A stretch of DNA of 57,078 bases, filler included, from Bipalium vagum (GCA_037834085.1; 3 parts of 3 records of this genome joined end to end with filler, not necessarily neighbours in it), one strand, 5' to 3'. Shown: positions 1 through 23,532, counted from the whole stretch's first letter. The notes: generated by a model not told the origin, from the letters alone. A program made the numbers and translations.

Positions 1-119
1 TAAAATAAAATTCAAATAAATTTGATTTTTAAATTAAAAGTTTTATCATAAAAATTATATTCAAATATTCAAATTATTAAGCCATTATTTAAACAAACAT
101 TTTTTTAATTAGTCAAAAA

Positions 120-267
120 TATGTACTTCTTACTGGTGTACTTATTATAGAAGTTTATATGAGTAGTAAAATACGTAATTATAGTCAAATCTATACAAAT
201 TTTAAAAGTCGTACTTAATACAGAATTGTACTTCGTATAGAGTATACTTAATATGGAGGTTTGACTG
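120..267. mobile_element. Terminus of a pogo/Tigger-like DNA transposon or MITE
   Basis: Ends ...TACTTAATATGGAGGTTTGACTG|TA (reverse complement CAGTCAAACCTCC, Tigger-like TIR, TA flank) with repeated subterminal GTACTTA(A/T)TA(T/C)AGA-like motifs. Confidence 0.55.
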
Positions 268-599
268 TAATGGTTTCTGATTGTCTTTACAAAATTTTAT
301 TTTATGGCAGTTTAAATATAAAAATTTTGAAATTTTTAAGGTATTAACTTTTCTACGAACCATTGGGTATAGCTAAAGAACATATTAGCTATAAAGATAA
401 ACAACATATTTTATAGTAGAAACAATAAAAAGATAAAAACATTTGAATAAAATAATTTAAATAGTCTATATATGACGTTAATCTTGATTTTTCATGTTTT
501 AGTTAAGGTTTTCCAAACTTTTGTCCAGTAGTGTATACATATACATTCAAAATACATCAATTGATTAAAATCAGACTCCGTAACCTTATTTGGATCAGT

Positions 600-1530
600 G
601 TTGTCTTGTCTTTAAAATCTAGATAGTACCTTTGGAAATAGAACGTATTTAAAATTATTGAACATTTGCAGTTATCAGAAAGTCGACTGTTTTGATCACT
701 ATAATTTTTCTAAGGTTAAATTCGTCGTCACGAAATATCAAAAGATTATAATCGTATTACAAAAACGGATGCTTTAACTTTGTTCATTCATCGCATAATA
801 TAATTAATTTTTAAATAAATCGTAGGGAAAAGAATCTATACAAAAATTTGGTTCAAAATATTTTAAAACTTCCCCATGGATTACAGACAAGGTTCAGGAA
901 AAGATTGATCAGGTCGTAGAAACATGTCTTCGAGAACAATAGTTGAAAGAAATTTGAAAGAATATCACTCAAGGCTGATTTACAACTGATTGAAGGACAT
1001 CAATCAATCGTTATAAAGATTGGAGTTCAGTCAAGTTGGAAGAAGTATAAACCTCGATTGATATTCGTTTCAATGGGTGTCAATATATTTTACAAGTTGA
1101 GGTGGTAATATTTTGATAAAAATTCTTTTCTCGTTAACAGTTTAAATCATTATTGGTGCGAATCAAGTACTTAAATTTCTTAGTATAATAATATAATTTC
1201 TTAATAATATATAATAATATATATAATTTCTTATAATATATAATAATTTCTTAGTATAAGAATTACTTCCTTGTATTTTACTAGTTTAAAATACTGTTTC
1301 GGGCTTGAAAGATGAGTTTTACTTTCCCGAATAGTCAAACTCTATTGAAATGATTTTTAACTATAATAACGTTGTATTTCTCAACAATCTATCTATTTAG
1401 GGATTTTTCAGAACATGAACATGAACATATTTATTGAATTGGAAAGATGAATGGAAAACTGTGTTCCTTGTAAAGCTCCAAATAAAGAATCTATATCATT
1501 AATCTGTCTTTATGGAGAAAAAACCTACAT
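600..1530 (+). mobile_element. Highly degenerate Gypsy-like pol (RNase H/integrase) remnant
   Basis: Scattered translated motifs KTDALT (cf. ADALS), DQVVETC, SIDIRFNGCQYILQV and LYGEK in the expected order; many stops and frameshifts. Confidence 0.3.
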
Positions 1531-1746
1531 TATTTTTAAATAGAAAATATTATTAATTGGTAATTTTTTGAGATTAAAAAATGGACCTGATAAAGAACCA
1601 TTTTCAAAACTGACTCCTATTTTATTTTACGTTTACCACCAATAAGAATCAGCTCGATTCTCTGATGAAAAGAAATGAGTATCCTACTTTTTTTAATCAG
1701 ATAATAAGGGAGATTGAGAAATGAATTCTGTTAGTTAAAAATTAAT

Positions 1747-1818
1747 CGGAGATACTGGAATTCGAACCCGGGACCTTCACATGCGCATGGACTGCTCTGA
1801 CCGCTGAGCTACATCCCC
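1747..1818 (-). pseudogene. tRNA-Ala(CGC)-derived sequence within the 3' LTR
   Basis: GGGGATGTAGCTCAGCGGTCAGAGCAGTCCATGCGCATGTGAAGGTCCCGGGTTCGAATTCCAGTATCTCCG; A box and B box (GGTTCGAATTCC) recognisable, anticodon stem poorly paired. Confidence 0.8.
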
Positions 1819-1956
1819 CAACTAATTTTCAATTTATCTCACATCCCCCTCCTTTAAAACTCACACCCATACCCTTAATCGCCCCGAGTCTCTTTACTTC
1901 CATTTCTATTCAATTCCTTTACATTTTTACTTCCGTGACCTCGTCCGCTGGTTGGT

Positions 1957-1974
1957 GTCCTGGCGTGGTCGCCA
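1957..1974 (-). other. Primer binding site complementary to a tRNA 3' end (Arg-TCG type)
   Basis: Plus strand reads GTCCTGGCGTGGTCGCCA, an 18-nt tRNA-like 3' end including CCA, directly abutting the LTR end. Confidence 0.8.
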
Positions 1975-2789
1975 TATTAGTTGAAAATTAACGGAGATAC
2001 CGGGACTCGAACCGAGACCTTCAAATGCGCATGAATTACTCTGACCGCTGAGCTACATAGAAAAATAAAGGTAAAATCAATTATAAGTAGGTTTAAAAGA
2101 AAAACGGAATTGAAAATTAAATTGCACCATGGGTATCTTTAATGAAAGATGAAATACACAAATACTAAACATTTTGATTTTTCGACTGCTTTTCAGAGGC
2201 TTCTTTCAAAGCTTTCTATGATATCTATATTTATATATCAAGAAATATAAAAAATATTCTATAAGATTTGTACAAATTATATTCGTTGTCGGATACATGA
2301 TTTTACTATATTATATTATTATTTCATTATATTATTATATATTATATTTTTTTTTATTTTATATATATAATTTATAATAAGGATATTTTATTTTATTCTG
2401 CTCATTTCGACAATGTTTTCATATTTTAATTATTTATTAATCAAAAGAATTTCTCATTTATAAATATCAAGCTGAATGTCTCAGTTCAATTTCTATAAAT
2501 ATAAATTAATTTCATTTTGAAACAATGATATTAATGATGGAGAGATTCAGTTATTATACCCCAGCCGTTCCCATTGAAATATCCTTTTTATACAAGTCTT
2601 CATCAAGTCGTTTGTGTCTGCTTCTAAAACAAAAACAAAACAACAAAATATCGGATACTTAGGCTATAAATAATTTTATACATTCAAATCTCATATATTA
2701 TTTTATAAACCTCTTTTAAAAAAATATTAAATAATTCCATTATTATAAAGAGTCATCCAAAAATAAAATATTTCTGTATTGATTTAATA

Positions 2790-3763
2790 TAATGGATGAT
2801 CTAAGAAGTTTCTACGGTATTTTAAAATAAAAACAAATTTTTTTTTCACATAACAAAAGAACTTTATTAAATCAAATATGTCATCTTTCTCAATTTATCT
2901 AATAAAATCATAATTCCATTATTCTAAAATTTCGGAGATTTCTGATTGAAAAAGTGCACAATGTACTTTTAGCAGTCTTCTATTGAAGCCAATGTTACTC
3001 TATTAAGAAAATTCAGTAGAGAGCGGAACAAATGATAGTCCGATGGCAGGAGGTTTGGACTATATAGTGGGTACATCATAACTTACGAATTTTTTCTGAT
3101 TAATGAGAGATTTATGGGCTCGTGCGTTGTCATTATGGAACACAATGCCTTTTCTGTTGAACAATTCTAGCTGCTTTTTAAAATTGATTTAATCTTGTTA
3201 ATTGCGATCCGTAGAATTCGGAATCAATTGTTTGGCCAAGTTCTATGAGCTCATAATGTACCATTCCTTTTCATCCCCACCATACGGATATCATTAACTT
3301 TCTTGGAGTTAACCTTGGCTTTGCAATCGTTTGTAGAGTTTCACCGCTTTTGACCATTTTTTATTGTCATACTTTATTTATTTTTTATCACCGCTTAAAG
3401 TTTTTCCGATAAATTATGAGCCATCAAAATATCGAGCTTCTTTTTCGATTTTTATCGAACCATTCACGGGCTGCTGTCTCTGATACAGTACTAGCTCCAT
3501 AATCATCATGTATCTTTTTGGCATTTTTTCCTTTCATGGAATAAAATTTAAGTTTGCACCTAGTTTCTTCCTTGTTTTGAATTTTTGTGACATTTATTTA
3601 GTTTATTAAAACAATTGATATTACCGATTTTTTTGAATAATTAAAATTAGATAATTGATTTCTAATTAGAAGTAATAATTTTGCATTTAGAACTTACAGA
3701 TTTGCTATTCAACTTAAAACAGTCCATGACAAAAACGGCGGGAACTTTTTAGGTCACCCAATA
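2790..3763 (-). mobile_element. Degenerate mariner element
   Basis: Imperfect TIRs (TAATGGATGATCTAAGAAGTTTC vs TATTGGGTGACCTAAAAAGTTCC); minus-strand motifs HNDNARAH and YPLYSPNLLPSDYHLFRSL. Confidence 0.85.
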
Positions 3764-5939
3764 TTACCAATGTTCCAAATTACTTATTCCTTAAAAAAAG
3801 TTCTTACTGGTTTAAAAATTCATTAAAATTAAAACAAACAAATAGTGATAATTAAATAGAAAGATAACTCTAAAAGACTTCATAAGAGAAAGAAAAAACT
3901 GAAAAAAAAATTCATCTTGAAAATTTAAAATGTTCTAAAAATTCAATTATAATCATTATAATTATGAAAGAAATAATTTTATCCAAGTTTGATTCTTGTA
4001 AATCTCAATTTCAAAAAGGTATATTTTATTTCACATTTCTAAGGTTTAATGATATTTATTATAGTTAAACATATTCAAATAATATATGTAATATTTTATT
4101 TAAAATAAATAATATTTTAATATAATATAATTTAAATTATACATAAGAAATATATAAATATAAATAAATAAATAAATATATATATATATATTAAAATAGT
4201 TAAATAATTGTGATAAAAAAATTCTTACGTCAATATTCATTTGTAATATATTTAACGTTATTTAATATAATAAAACTTTTAATTAAGAACATTATCAAAA
4301 TTGGAATTGGCTGATGTCTTTCGTTTCCTTTTGCAAAAAATGGATGTCTTAAACTATTTACTTAAAATATCAAGATGAGTTTGAAAAAAGTTTTACAAAA
4401 TATGATAAAATATTTTTAAAAAGTATGTAATTTATATTTATCAAATGCGAATATTATTCGTTTATATTAATTATTTTATATTTTGATTGATTTCTTTGGT
4501 TTTTCAATAATAAAACAATTGATATTTCAATTTACTCGTTTCAAATAATCTCGAATATATTTGTGAAACTGGACGTGCTCATATTTTTAGGTAAACATCT
4601 TCCGCTTTGTCTAAAAATGTAGAGAACTAAACTTAAAAGGCCTAGGGACGACCCAATATATAACCTTATCAATATTAAGCTAGGGACCTTATTTGTATAA
4701 CAGATATAAGTTTCATTATGGATTAGAGATTTTCGGATAATAAGATTTGAGTATTGTGGATAGGGCTTACAATTTTCACTCTGAAAAATTAGATTAGTAA
4801 CTATTCTTTAAGGTTAAAACCCTGAAGAAAAGAACTTATATATCCCATCTAATATTTCAACAGACTTTGTGAATATATTTGAAAATATTTTAACAACTGC
4901 CGGTCGACTTATATACAAATACTCTTTCTCTTTAATTATATCCATCCGAACTAGAAATACCCTCGATTAGTTCAGGTTTTAACGGCATTCTCTGATTGAA
5001 AGAAAGGGCCTATAACCATTGGTCTGTATGCCTAAGCTTTTAAGATTTTATCTATAAAATAAAATTTTACTTGAAAAAAATCACTGCCTTTTTTTCAATA
5101 TTTGATTCATTTATAAGTTTTTTTATTCTATTATTTTGATTTATTTTTCCTTTAATCTATATTATTTGTCGTTTGCATCAGCCGACTTGTTATAGCAACT
5201 CCAACCCTAGCCCGAATATAGATTTTTATATATAATATTTTTATATTTATGTATAAATTATTCTTCAGCAGCAATTAATTTTTTGTATTAATGATTATAT
5301 TATTATTATGTATTATATGTAATATATTTTATAATTTTTCATTGACATAAATGATTACATTTTCCTTTAAAAAAATATAAAAAATCTGCCATCATCCTGA
5401 GAATTATAATTTCATTTAAAAAGGAAGTCGAAACATCATAAACAAAAATGCCGTATAAATTTACTTTGATGTAATTAGTCTTAAAGTGCAAAAAATGCTT
5501 TTGTTTTAATCGATCTCAATACTTCTGAAGTAAATAAAACAAAAGAGGTTTGTGAGAACTGTCTTCTTATGTCAAAATAAAAATTTTATGAGATATATAA
5601 TATTTGGATATTAATAGTATGGTTAATTTATTTTTAATATTATTTTAATATTTTATTTTTAAAAATTTATTTTAAATTTATTATCTAAAAAATAGAGTTT
5701 TAATATTTCATTTATATTATGTATAAGGTTTTTTTTACTATGAAATATATTTTTTATATAATTTATGATTAAAAATTAAAAATTATATTAATAAATATAA
5801 AATTAAAATCACAATTTCATTATATATTGTTGGAATCAGCTAATCTGAAAGACAAATGCCAACATGTAAACTTCACTATTATACAGAACAACACTCGACC
5901 TCATGTAGCAAATTTTATCAATTATTTCTCAGAGCAAAT

Positions 5940-22787: not shown

Positions 22788-23234
22788 TTAAAAACTCTTA
22801 ATTATTCTGGTATTTTTAATGTGTCTGTATTTACAAGATTCTCCAATTTCTTCATGGAACTCTTCATTATATAAATACTGGTGATCGGTTCTTACGGCCA
22901 ACGTTTTGAACGTAACATTTTTCCGGATCAATTCACAATAGCCACTTCCTGCCTTTATCTGGAGAATACAACGATCAATATTAATGTACACCGGCTTGTT
23001 CAGACAAGGACGAATGTGAAGAAAATATATCGGTTGACAGGGTTGATTTGTGATCTCTTTCGGTGTCAGCTCAATTTTCTGTTCTGCTTCGGTCATCCGC
23101 ACAGTGAGTGGAATGAACCGATTAAATTGATCATTAACTTCCATCCATATCCTTACCCAATTTTTGAAGGGCAGGCAATCTTTGGACAGACAAAGAGAAA
23201 TGCTGAGGAGCAAGGTAAAAGCTGAGAAAAACAT
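22788..23234 (-). CDS. Single-exon secreted protein, 148 aa, possible divergent cystine-knot growth factor (noggin/trunk/PTTH/IL-17-like fold)
   Basis: Longest ORF in the window, visibly higher GC than flanks; ATG at 23234 opens signal-peptide-like MFFSAFTLLLSISLCLS; six Cys in the mature part; CQPIYFLHIRPCLNKPVYINIDRC...GYCE...IGESCKY. Confidence 0.72.
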   Translation of the reverse strand: MFFSAFTLLLSISLCLSKDCLPFKNWVRIWMEVNDQFNRFIPLTVRMTEAEQKIELTPKEITNQPCQPIYFLHIRPCLNKPVYINIDRCILQIKAGSGYCELIRKNVTFKTLAVRTDHQYLYNEEFHEEIGESCKYRHIKNTRIIKSF

Positions 23235-23532
23235 GAAAGTTGAAGGTAGATATTTATTTGAAAGTATTCTATCGCGATTTACACCTGTATTTATAGCTGA
23301 ATGGATTGCCAACGTAATTGGCTGCGATAGTACGAAACTTCAGTTATTACACAAATTTCGATGTATGATCGCTTCGAAGGCGTGCTTTTATCGCTTTTGT
23401 TATTTATAAAAATCGGACCTCAAATATAATATAAAGAAAATTATAAATATAATATTTATTTATATATTTTAGATTTCTATGTATCCATGTAATAATAATA
23501 ATATTATTTTTATTATATTATTATTATTATTA

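What the first reader, a model, noticed from the sequence alone, without database searches (positions are those of the whole stretch)
1729..2058. Miniature LTR retroelement whose LTRs are built around a tRNA-Ala gene
Seen: what looks like two tandem tRNA-SINEs is LTR-PBS-interior-PPT-LTR on the minus strand. The complete LTR is 115 bp, starts TG and ends CA, and 72 nt of it is a tRNA-Ala(CGC)-like unit with A and B boxes. The 131-bp interior has no ORF, begins with an 18-nt PBS and ends with PPT AAAGGAGGGGGA abutting the LTR. Established: plant Cassandra TRIMs carry 5S rRNA in their LTRs; as I recall, tRNA-bearing TRIMs have also been reported (Helenus), so the class may be known while this family may not be. 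Inference: a Pol III-driven, roughly 360-bp hitchhiker mobilised by an autonomous LTR element's RT and integrase, easily mis-annotated as tRNA or SINE.
Basis: partly seen in the sequence, partly recalled or inferred. Interest (0 to 1): 0.85.

Follow-up and report, generated by a model that had tools for sequence, protein, structure and literature searches.

The report
Flatworm mini-retrotransposon with tRNA-like LTRs
The finding is real: it is one worn copy of a roughly 360-bp non-coding LTR retrotransposon whose terminal repeats carry a tRNA-Ala-like unit, a kind already described in 2024 as "Helenus", here seen in a flatworm genome and with 5-bp rather than 4-bp target duplications.

Summary
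On the minus strand, window 2058..1729 reads: truncated 5' LTR, 18-nt PBS, 131-nt ORF-less interior, PPT, complete 115-bp TG..CA 3' LTR. A 72-nt tRNA-like unit in the 3' LTR scores 34.1 bits against Rfam tRNA.

Intact copies elsewhere in the genome are 361-362 bp. Eleven of 17 have perfect 5-bp target-site duplications; the 4- and 6-bp registers give none. Diagnostic 17-mers occur 340 to 2,580 times, against 0-11 for reversed controls. The PBS is a perfect 18/18 complement of a tRNA-Arg(ACG) gene found in the same assembly.

The host is very probably a planarian-type flatworm, judged from mitochondrial code 9 and the order trnF-cox1-trnE-nad6-nad5.

The class is known: Helenus/TRIMp3 (Kojima 2024). 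That paper lists no flatworm and reports 4-bp duplications for all animal families. This is therefore a new member of a known kind.

A candidate helper is a Ty3/Gypsy clade with roughly 100-nt LTRs, the same tRNA-Arg PBS and a similar PPT/LTR-start junction.

Pol III transcription is consistent with the sequence: A and B boxes, T4 after the unit in 33 of 34 LTRs, and a sense strand almost free of T4. It remains untested because no RNA run exists. The window copy itself is old and dead.

The parts
1975..2058 (-). 5' LTR, truncated. It corresponds to LTR positions ~30-115, ends TA instead of CA, and is 87% identical to the 3' LTR.
1992..2058 (-). Partial tRNA-Ala-like unit of the 5' LTR, with about the first 5 nt missing.
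   Evidence: It does not reach the Rfam threshold.
1984..1987 (-). T4 run 8 nt after the tRNA-like unit in the 5' LTR. It looks like a Pol III terminator and would have to be read through.
   Evidence: T4 is present in 33 of 34 LTRs of other copies.
1957..1974 (-). Primer-binding site TGGCGACCACGCCAGGAC, an 18/18 complement of the 3' end (plus CCA) of tRNA-Arg(ACG).
   Evidence: The tRNA gene is in L055, 5-77 (-).
1844..1974 (-). Non-coding interior of 131 nt, including the PBS and PPT. It is purine-rich.
1844..1855 (-). Polypurine tract AAAGGAGGGGGA, abutting the 3' LTR.
1729..1843 (-). Complete 3' LTR of 115 nt (TGTGAG...CTAACA). Inferred layout: U3 about 24 nt, R = tRNA-like unit up to the T-run, U5 about 8 nt.
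   Evidence: The U3/R/U5 split is inference.
1747..1818 (-). tRNA-Ala-derived unit of 72 nt. Acceptor (with G3:U70), D and T arms are intact; the anticodon arm is collapsed.
   Evidence: Rfam RF00005, 34.1 bits; ARAGORN negative
1801..1811 (-). A box TAGCTCAGCGG.
   Evidence: read. Intact in 27 of 34 LTRs of other copies.
1758..1768 (-). B box GGTTCGAATTC. Most other copies have GGTTCGAATCC.
1737..1741 (-). T5 run after the tRNA-like unit in the 3' LTR, the presumed Pol III terminator and 3' end of R.

Best explanation
Window 1729-2058 (minus strand) is one old, 5'-truncated copy of a high-copy, non-autonomous LTR retrotransposon. It is a terminal-repeat retrotransposon in miniature (TRIM) of the Helenus/TRIMp3 type, and the genome is very probably that of a planarian-like flatworm.

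Shown:
- Intact copies are 361-362 bp: a 115-bp TG..CA LTR, a PBS, about 100 nt of purine-rich spacer, a PPT and a second LTR.
- Each LTR consists of 24 nt, then a 72-nt tRNA-Ala-derived unit with A and B boxes, then an 18-19-nt tail containing a T4 run.
- Minus-strand priming is specified by the 3' 18 nt of tRNA-Arg(ACG).
- Integration duplicates 5 bp of target.

Inferred:
- The element borrows reverse transcriptase and integrase from an autonomous element. The best candidate is a Ty3/Gypsy clade in the same genome with unusually short (~100 nt) LTRs, the same tRNA-Arg PBS and a near-identical PPT/LTR-start junction.
- Its RNA is made by RNA polymerase III from the internal A/B-box promoter. 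In that case R is the tRNA-like unit, U3 is only 24 nt and U5 about 8 nt. The T4 run would be read through in the 5' LTR and used as terminator in the 3' LTR.
For: Structure and coordinates.

Family:
- 3,463 candidates; 40 of 40 scored were 86-92% identical over the full length.
- A MAFFT alignment of 30 loci with flanks shows two full LTRs in most copies, with similarity ending exactly at TG and CA.

TSD:
- 11 of 17 are perfect at 5 bp and 2 more match 4/5.
- The 4-bp and 6-bp registers give 0 of 17 perfect.
- Shuffled pairings give a mean of 0.05 perfect, with a maximum of 1.

Copy numbers from 17-mers with at most 1 mismatch:
- LTR start: 2,580 (control 11).
- tRNA core: 1,492.
- LTR-end/PBS junction: 615.
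- PPT/LTR junction: 340.

PBS: a real tRNA-Arg(acg) gene lies in L055 (ARAGORN). Its 3' end is GTCCTGGCGTGGTCG.

tRNA-like unit: Rfam tRNA 34.1 bits.

LTR copying: the own 3' LTR is the best match of the 5' LTR in 5 of 17 copies, against about 1 expected by chance. Mean identity is 94.2% within elements and 92.5% between them.

Pol III compatibility:
- T4 after the unit in 33 of 34 LTRs, and no T4 earlier in any LTR.
- The interior has a T4 on the sense strand in 2 of 30 copies, but an A4+ run in 28 of 30. It is 69% purine and 17% T in a genome that is about 75% A+T.

Helper candidate:
- L063 encodes gag plus PR-RT-RNaseH-IN and is of Ty3/Gypsy type. Its contig is circularly permuted, with about 99 nt between the PPT and PBS TGGCGACCACGCC.
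- L068 has the same layout.
- TRIM GGAGGGGGATGTGAGATAAA matches L063 GGAGGGGGAAGTTAGATAAA at 18 of 20 positions, at the homologous junction.
- 115 non-TRIM sites read 'TAAC|TGGCGACCACACCGA'. They lie 0.9-1.2 kb upstream of L063-like pol in C197581, C227719 and C42797.

Class: Kojima 2024, PMC10886601.

Host: in cox1, AAA encodes Asn, AGA Ser and TGA Trp. The gene order is trnF-cox1-trnE-nad6-nad5, and this was compared with triclad mitogenomes.
Against: - No RNA run exists for this organism. Neither transcription nor the polymerase is shown.
- As a Pol III unit, each LTR carries its own terminator 8 nt after the tRNA-like part. A transcript starting in the 5' LTR would stop after about 85 nt unless the T4 is leaky.
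- The absence of T4 in the interior is really one ancestral sequence, not 30 independent observations.
- The Gypsy candidates do not show clean TG..CA termini. L063 reads ...GGGGGAAG|TTAGAT and ...TTTTAC|TGG.
- Similarity outside the PBS, PPT and LTR tips is nil.
- Most TRIM copies carry ACACC in the PBS, whereas all 7 tRNA-Arg-type 3' ends in the assembly carry the complement of ACGCC.
- Host identity rests on one mitochondrial contig in an assembly that holds three different cox1 sequences.
Confidence: 0.85

Rival explanations
1. It is a genuine TRIM, but the tRNA-like unit is a passenger: an old SINE or tRNA-pseudogene insertion into an LTR that was then copied to both LTRs. The template RNA would be made by Pol II, from the 24-nt U3 with its ATAAAT motif or by read-through from neighbouring genes, and not by Pol III.
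For: - The T4 terminator sits directly behind the unit in 33 of 34 LTRs. It would abort Pol III transcripts before the PBS.
- B boxes are intact in only 16 of 34 LTRs.
- There are no RNA data.
- Kojima also states that the Pol III promoter function of Helenus is unvalidated.
Against: - 24 nt is very short for a Pol II U3 promoter.
- The A and B boxes and the terminator are kept across subfamilies 80-90% apart.
- The interior avoids T4 on the sense strand only.
- According to Kojima, Cassandra, the 5S counterpart, produces transcripts from its Pol III promoter.
Confidence: 0.3
2. The helper is not the short-LTR Ty3/Gypsy clade (L063-like) but some other autonomous LTR element of this genome, for example Copia or BEL/Pao, that uses tRNA-Arg and makes 5-bp duplications.
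For: - In Kojima's survey, 5-bp TSDs go with Copia helpers and 4-bp TSDs with Gypsy helpers.
- The LTR tips of L063 and L068 are not TG..CA.
- Only 13 integrase-bearing contigs were inspected, out of 2,155 candidates.
Against: - Both contigs with an exact 13-nt tRNA-Arg PBS, among the 13 examined, are Gypsy.
- The abundant non-TRIM PBS family sits upstream of Gypsy pol in three contigs.
- The PPT/LTR-start junction matches at 18 of 20 positions.
- The TRIM and that Gypsy family share the same derived PBS variant, ACACC.
Confidence: 0.3
3. It is two tandem tRNA-derived SINE copies (or a SINE dimer) mobilised by a LINE, and not an LTR element.
For: At first sight there are two tRNA-like heads about 245 bp apart.
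Against: - The repeat extends 24 nt upstream and 19 nt downstream of the tRNA unit, to sharp TG and CA ends.
- A PBS and a PPT sit exactly at the inner LTR borders.
- The TSD is a fixed 5 bp.
- No copy has an A-rich or simple-repeat tail.
Confidence: 0.02
4. They are ordinary tRNA-Ala genes or pseudogenes duplicated locally.
For: The Rfam tRNA hit is above the gathering score.
Against: - ARAGORN finds no tRNA, and the anticodon arm is collapsed.
- There are thousands of dispersed copies, always in the same LTR context.
Confidence: 0.01

Closest known systems
Helenus (TRIMp3), Kojima 2024, Biology 13:119 (PMC10886601)
   Same: [quoted passage not shown]
- The PBS is complementary to a tRNA 3' end, and a PPT is present.
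- It has no coding capacity.
- Its length of 361 bp falls inside the reported range of 311-1263 bp.
- The tRNA-like part does not encode a working tRNA and is unrelated to the primer tRNA.
- The putative helper shares little beyond the PBS region.
- The copy number is in the thousands, as for LTR-11_DR.
   Different: - The host phylum, Platyhelminthes, is not among the six animal phyla listed. No flatworm name appears in the supplementary tables.
- The TSD is 5 bp, whereas all animal Helenus families are reported with 4 bp.
- The primer is tRNA-Arg(ACG). The paper's only Arg example is tRNA-Arg-TCT, in wasps.
- The candidate helper is Gypsy, as in other animals, but with ~100-nt LTRs.
Cassandra (plant TRIM with 5S rRNA in the LTRs; as described in PMC10886601)
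   Same: It is an LTR-PBS-PPT-LTR miniature element carrying a Pol III-type small-RNA gene in each LTR.
   Different: The captured gene is a 5S rRNA, not a tRNA. The hosts are plants. Cassandra is 565-860 bp long. Transcription from its Pol III promoter is reported, whereas here it is untested.
ta-TRIM of taeniid tapeworms (Koziol et al. 2015, PMC4558846)
   Same: It is a TRIM in a flatworm with TG..CA LTRs, a PBS and a PPT. A Gypsy-like candidate helper was identified by shared LTR tips and PBS.
   Different: ta-TRIM has ~198-bp LTRs without any small-RNA gene, a ~590-bp interior, a tRNA-Leu PBS set 4 nt from the LTR, and 4-bp TSDs.
tRNA-derived SINEs (SINE2)
   Same: Both have a tRNA-like head with A and B boxes, are short and non-coding, and reach high copy number. 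Both are easily mis-called as tRNA genes.
   Different: This element has no LINE-type or A-rich tail and no variable-length TSD. It has terminal direct repeats, a PBS and a PPT, so it uses the LTR-retrotransposon mechanism.

Membership tests
TRIM (terminal-repeat retrotransposon in miniature) | Two short direct terminal repeats bounded by TG...CA | tested here: met
   115-bp LTRs. All 34 LTRs of 17 full copies start TG and end CA. In the window copy the 3' LTR is complete and the 5' LTR is truncated.
TRIM (terminal-repeat retrotransposon in miniature) | PBS complementary to a tRNA 3' end next to the 5' LTR | tested here: met
   18/18 match to tRNA-Arg(ACG)+CCA from the same genome, 0 nt from the LTR.
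TRIM (terminal-repeat retrotransposon in miniature) | Polypurine tract next to the 3' LTR | tested here: met
   AAAGGAGGGGGA abuts TG in the window copy and in nearly all other copies. The junction occurs 340 times, with a control of 0.
TRIM (terminal-repeat retrotransposon in miniature) | No coding capacity, total length well under 1 kb | tested here: met
   361-362 bp. The longest ORF overlapping the element is 24 aa.
TRIM (terminal-repeat retrotransposon in miniature) | Fixed-length target-site duplication at dispersed insertions | tested here: met
   5 bp: 11 of 17 perfect and 2 at 4/5. The 4- and 6-bp registers give 0 of 17. The shuffled control gives 0.05.
Helenus / TRIMp3 | tRNA-derived sequence with A and B boxes inside the LTRs | tested here: met
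   Rfam tRNA 34.1 bits, above the gathering score of 29. A box TAGCTCAGCGG and B box GGTTCGAATCC are present.
Helenus / TRIMp3 | Transcription by RNA polymerase III from that promoter | not testable with these tools
   No RNA run exists for the organism. The only indirect signs are the T4 terminator and the T4-free sense interior.
Helenus, animal group as described in 2024 | 4-bp TSD. This is a reported regularity, not a definition. | tested here: not met
   The TSD is 5 bp. The paper reports 4 bp for all animal families.
tRNA-derived SINE (SINE2) | 3' tail that is A-rich, a simple repeat or LINE-derived, with variable TSDs | tested here: not met
   Copies end at CA, followed directly by the 5-bp TSD and unrelated flanks.
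Cassandra / Ajax | 5S rRNA-derived sequence in the LTR | tested here: not met
   The only Rfam match in the element is tRNA.
Functional tRNA-Ala gene | Complete cloverleaf with a 7-nt anticodon loop | tested here: not met
   ARAGORN finds none. The Rfam alignment skips the anticodon arm, 16 nt against 17 in the model.

The most novel reading that the evidence does not exclude
This would be the first TRIMp3/Helenus lineage in Platyhelminthes, and a minimal Pol III-driven LTR retroelement. Its R region would be the tRNA-like unit itself, bounded by that unit's own T4 terminator. U3 would be only 24 nt and U5 about 8 nt. Productive RNA would need read-through of the terminator in the 5' LTR. The element would have arisen from, and would still be mobilised by, a Ty3/Gypsy clade with ~100-nt LTRs and a tRNA-Arg PBS, giving 5-bp TSDs unlike all other animal Helenus families.
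Probability: 0.4. Interest if true: 0.6.

Novelty: new member of a known kind. Interest (0 to 1): 0.4.

Why it matters
- Annotation: at least 2,500 LTRs in this genome each carry a sequence that passes the Rfam tRNA threshold. tRNA and SINE annotation of flatworm genomes will be inflated unless the family is recognised.
- Range of the class: this extends Helenus/TRIMp3 to a seventh animal phylum. It also breaks the reported rule that animal families make 4-bp and fungal or plant families 5-bp duplications.
- Tractable pairing: the element comes with a concrete helper candidate, a compact Gypsy with ~100-nt LTRs and the same primer tRNA. For most TRIMs the helper is unknown, so this pair could be used to study how a Pol III transcript gets packaged and reverse-transcribed.
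- Experimental access: planarian-type flatworms are experimentally accessible and have abundant stem cells. The Pol III question is therefore directly testable there.

Tried and rejected
- ARAGORN on the window found no tRNA. The unit is tRNA-derived but not a tRNA gene.
- The look-up of sequencing runs returned one DNA-type run and no RNA. Expression could not be tested.
- Read laying on that run gave contigs only. Summed depths (about 250,000-300,000 over the tRNA core against about 19 on the flanks) are not copy numbers and were not used. The core 17-mer count (1,492) is in fact lower than the LTR-start count (2,580), so nothing points to a separate, larger SINE family with the same head.
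- Host identification by the insect odorant-receptor family gave nothing, and its control was also silent, so it is uninformative. The protein atlas on the Gypsy pol gave no useful taxon.
- Intra- versus inter-element LTR identity gave only a weak signal (94.2% against 92.5%; own partner best in 5 of 17). This is what a burst from near-identical masters would produce, and it is not strong evidence on its own.
- L046 and L054, which have PBS-like TGACGACCACACCAGGA in another context, were looked at as helper candidates. They have no long ORFs and were dropped.
- The other ten integrase-bearing contigs have no tRNA-Arg PBS, and L066 has only a degenerate PBS-like match. L060 and L064 have terminal repeats but no usable flanks.
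- A tRNA-Arg isodecoder matching the common PBS variant ACACC was sought and not found. All 7 hits carry the C variant.
I did not try to read flanks through N-padded patterns.
- No consensus of the element or of the Gypsy candidates was built, in line with the tool's notice on retroelement stretches.

Full report
**1. The observation**

On the minus strand the window reads, 5' to 3':
- An 84-nt repeat copy at 2058..1975.
- TGGCGACCACGCCAGGAC at 1974..1957.
- A purine-rich spacer.
- AAAGGAGGGGGA at 1855..1844.
- A 115-nt repeat copy at 1843..1729 that begins TGTGAG and ends CTAACA.

The repeat finder links the two copies with a 244-245 nt offset. blastn gives 87% identity over 84 nt, with the upstream copy lacking about the first 30 nt.

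Rfam's tRNA model matches 1818..1747 at 34.1 bits, above the gathering score of 29. The acceptor, D and T arms align, while the anticodon arm is skipped. ARAGORN calls nothing. The acceptor stem keeps the G3:U70 pair typical of tRNA-Ala, which I read from the sequence. The anticodon loop is collapsed into the palindrome CATGCGCATG.

No ORF longer than 24 aa overlaps the element. Only one copy of the element lies in the window.

**2. It is a family, and it behaves as an LTR retroelement**

A search of the window's own 440.8-Mb assembly gave 3,463 first-look candidates. All 40 scored were 86-92% identical across the whole 330 nt.

Aligning 30 loci with flanks shows the following:
- Most copies carry a full 115-nt LTR at both ends.
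- Similarity stops exactly at TG on the left and CA on the right.
- The PBS follows the 5' LTR with no spacer.
- The PPT abuts the 3' LTR.

Seventeen complete copies were analysed.
- Element length is 361-362 bp.
- All 34 LTRs start TG and end CA.
- The 5 nt before the element equal the 5 nt after it perfectly in 11 copies and at 4 of 5 positions in 2 more.
- The 4-bp and 6-bp registers give no perfect case.
- Shuffled pairings give a mean of 0.05 perfect cases.
- No copy has an A-rich or simple-repeat tail.

The SINE reading is therefore excluded.

The two LTRs of one element are each other's best match in 5 of 17 cases, against about 1 expected by chance. Mean identity is 94.2% within elements and 92.5% between them. 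This agrees with LTR copying, but it is weak evidence, as expected if many copies come from near-identical masters.

**3. Abundance**

Whole-genome counts of 17-mers with at most one mismatch, with reversed-pattern controls:

| 17-mer | Hits | Control |
|---|---|---|
| LTR start | 2,580 | 11 |
| tRNA core | 1,492 | 0 |
| LTR-end/PBS junction | 615 | 0 |
| PPT/LTR junction | 340 | 0 |

LTR starts outnumber interior junctions by about four to one or more. Many LTRs are therefore solo, truncated, or belong to sister subfamilies.

The sister subfamilies are real:
- L051 has 126-nt LTRs with 9-10 extra nt in the anticodon region.
- L038 has an interior of only about 42 nt.

**4. The primer**

A pattern search for the complement of the PBS, not followed by CCA, found a bona fide tRNA-Arg(ACG) gene: L055 5-77, confirmed by ARAGORN. 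Its 3' end plus CCA is the exact 18-nt complement of the window copy's PBS.

Most other copies read ACACC instead of ACGCC at PBS positions 9-13, which is one mismatch. All seven tRNA-Arg-type 3' ends in the assembly carry the C variant. The common PBS variant therefore does not come from the tRNA. This is unexplained.

**5. The host**

Organism names are coded. The window is about 25% G+C.

A mitochondrial contig of the assembly (L031) encodes cox1 with TGA at Trp positions. AAA falls at the conserved Asn residues of GGFGNW and PRxNNxSFW, and AGA at Ser. This is genetic code 9, shared by flatworms and echinoderms. The gene order is trnF-cox1-trnE-nad6-nad5 on one strand.

From my own knowledge, cox1-E-nad6-nad5 is the triclad order. 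The triclad mitogenome paper states that all genes are on one strand, that code 9 is used, and that trnF abuts nad4 in the land planarian Obama.

I therefore take the host to be a planarian-type flatworm. One caveat is that two further, different cox1 sequences are in the assembly.

**6. How it most likely works**

Shown: tRNA-Arg-specified priming, a PPT, TG..CA ends and a 5-bp staggered integration. This is the standard LTR-retrotransposon cycle, carried out in trans because the element encodes nothing.

*Helper (inferred).* Thirteen integrase-bearing contigs were fetched.
- Two have an exact 13-nt tRNA-Arg PBS.
- L063 is an intact, compact Ty3/Gypsy element. Its gag has Retrotrans_gag and zf-CCHC domains, and its pol has PR-RVT_1-RNaseH-Integrase_H2C2-rve.
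- The L063 contig is circularly permuted, with a 77-nt overlap. One LTR therefore lies between the PPT GGGAGGGGGAAG and the PBS, and it is only about 99 nt long.
- L068 has the same layout.
- The TRIM's PPT/LTR-start junction matches L063's at 18 of 20 positions, at the homologous place. Its LTR-end/PBS junction matches L068's at 18 of 22.
- A pattern designed to exclude the TRIM found 115 sites, nearly all 'TAAC|TGGCGACCACACCGA'. In C197581, C227719 and C42797 these lie 0.9-1.2 kb upstream of pol sequences 46-53% identical to L063's, on the same strand.
- That Gypsy family shares the TRIM's derived ACACC PBS variant.

Against the pairing: the Gypsy LTR tips are not clean TG..CA, their TSD length is unknown, and nothing else is similar.

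*Polymerase (inferred).*
- Each LTR has an A box (intact in 27 of 34), a B box (16 of 34) and a T4 run 8 nt after the unit (33 of 34). No T4 occurs earlier in any LTR.
- The interior has a sense-strand T4 in 2 of 30 copies and an A4+ run in 28 of 30. It is only 17% T.
- This fits a Pol III transcript that starts at tRNA +1. R would then be the tRNA-like unit, U3 24 nt and U5 about 8 nt.
- It also means the T4 of the 5' LTR must be read through.
- No RNA data exist to test this.

**7. Comparison with what is known**

Helenus was reported from:
- Pucciniales and some Agaricomycetes among fungi.
- Selaginella among plants.

All animal families were reported with 4-bp TSDs and Gypsy-like PBS regions. 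Fungal and plant families have 5-bp TSDs.

No flatworm name occurs in the paper's supplementary tables. No later paper in the library uses the term TRIMp3 for flatworms. The only flatworm TRIM I found in the literature, ta-TRIM of tapeworms, has 198-bp LTRs without a small-RNA gene, a tRNA-Leu PBS and 4-bp TSDs.

The present family meets every structural criterion of Helenus. It differs in host phylum, TSD length and primer tRNA.

**8. Verdict**

The family itself appears undescribed. It is a new member of a known kind, of moderate interest.

The window copy is an old, dead one: its 5' LTR is truncated, its LTRs have diverged by 13%, it has no recognisable TSD, and it has acquired a T4 in the interior.

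Noticed in passing
L031 (G000:C253947), L032 (C246471), L033 (C253320): The assembly holds three different cox1 sequences in which TGA is the only in-frame stop. L032 is 80% and L033 69% identical in amino acids to L031. They could come from a second flatworm, from prey or commensal DNA, or from recent nuclear copies.
   Followed up: partly
L063 (G000:C196613) 1-4469: This is an intact, very compact Ty3/Gypsy element with a unit length of 4,392 bp. Only about 99 nt lie between the PPT and PBS, an unusually short LTR for an autonomous element. The contig is circularly permuted with a 77-nt overlap. L066 and L068 show the same 77-nt overlap.
   Followed up: partly
L023, L027, L028 (alignment): Three loci carry the same 5'-truncated TRIM, starting at LTR position 77, and share the same upstream flank. 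That fragment is therefore part of a larger repeated unit.
   Followed up: no
L040, L043, L044, L056: These short contigs contain the 3' half of tRNA-Arg(ACG) followed by an identical flank (TATTTTTTGATAATTGAATTTTTCAA), but their 5' parts are unrelated. ARAGORN finds no tRNA in them. They may be split genes, intron-containing genes or pseudogene copies.
   Followed up: partly
L011, L019, L021 (5' LTR) and L026 (3' LTR): The same 13-nt deletion (TCCCGGGTTCGAA), lying between two TCCCGG direct repeats, removes the B box. It occurs in only one LTR of four independent insertions, which looks like recurrent slippage.
   Followed up: no
L051 1263-1643; L038 around 1404-1636: These are sister subfamilies. 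One has 126-nt LTRs with 9-10 extra nt in the anticodon region. The other is a derivative whose interior is only about 42 nt, consisting of the PBS, 10 nt and the PPT.
   Followed up: partly
PBS of most copies: About five in six TRIM copies, and nearly all copies of the Gypsy-type 'TAAC|TGGCGACCACACCGA' family, read ACACC in the PBS. All 7 tRNA-Arg-type 3' ends in the assembly would give ACGCC. The shared mismatch is unexplained.
   Followed up: partly
window 2230-2380: A very A+T-rich stretch with imperfect direct and inverted repeats lies just beside the element (families D3, I1 and I3).
   Followed up: no
window 22788-23312: The only ORFs of 90 aa or more in the 23.5-kb piece lie here, overlapping on opposite strands (174 aa and 114 aa). 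They were not examined.
   Followed up: no
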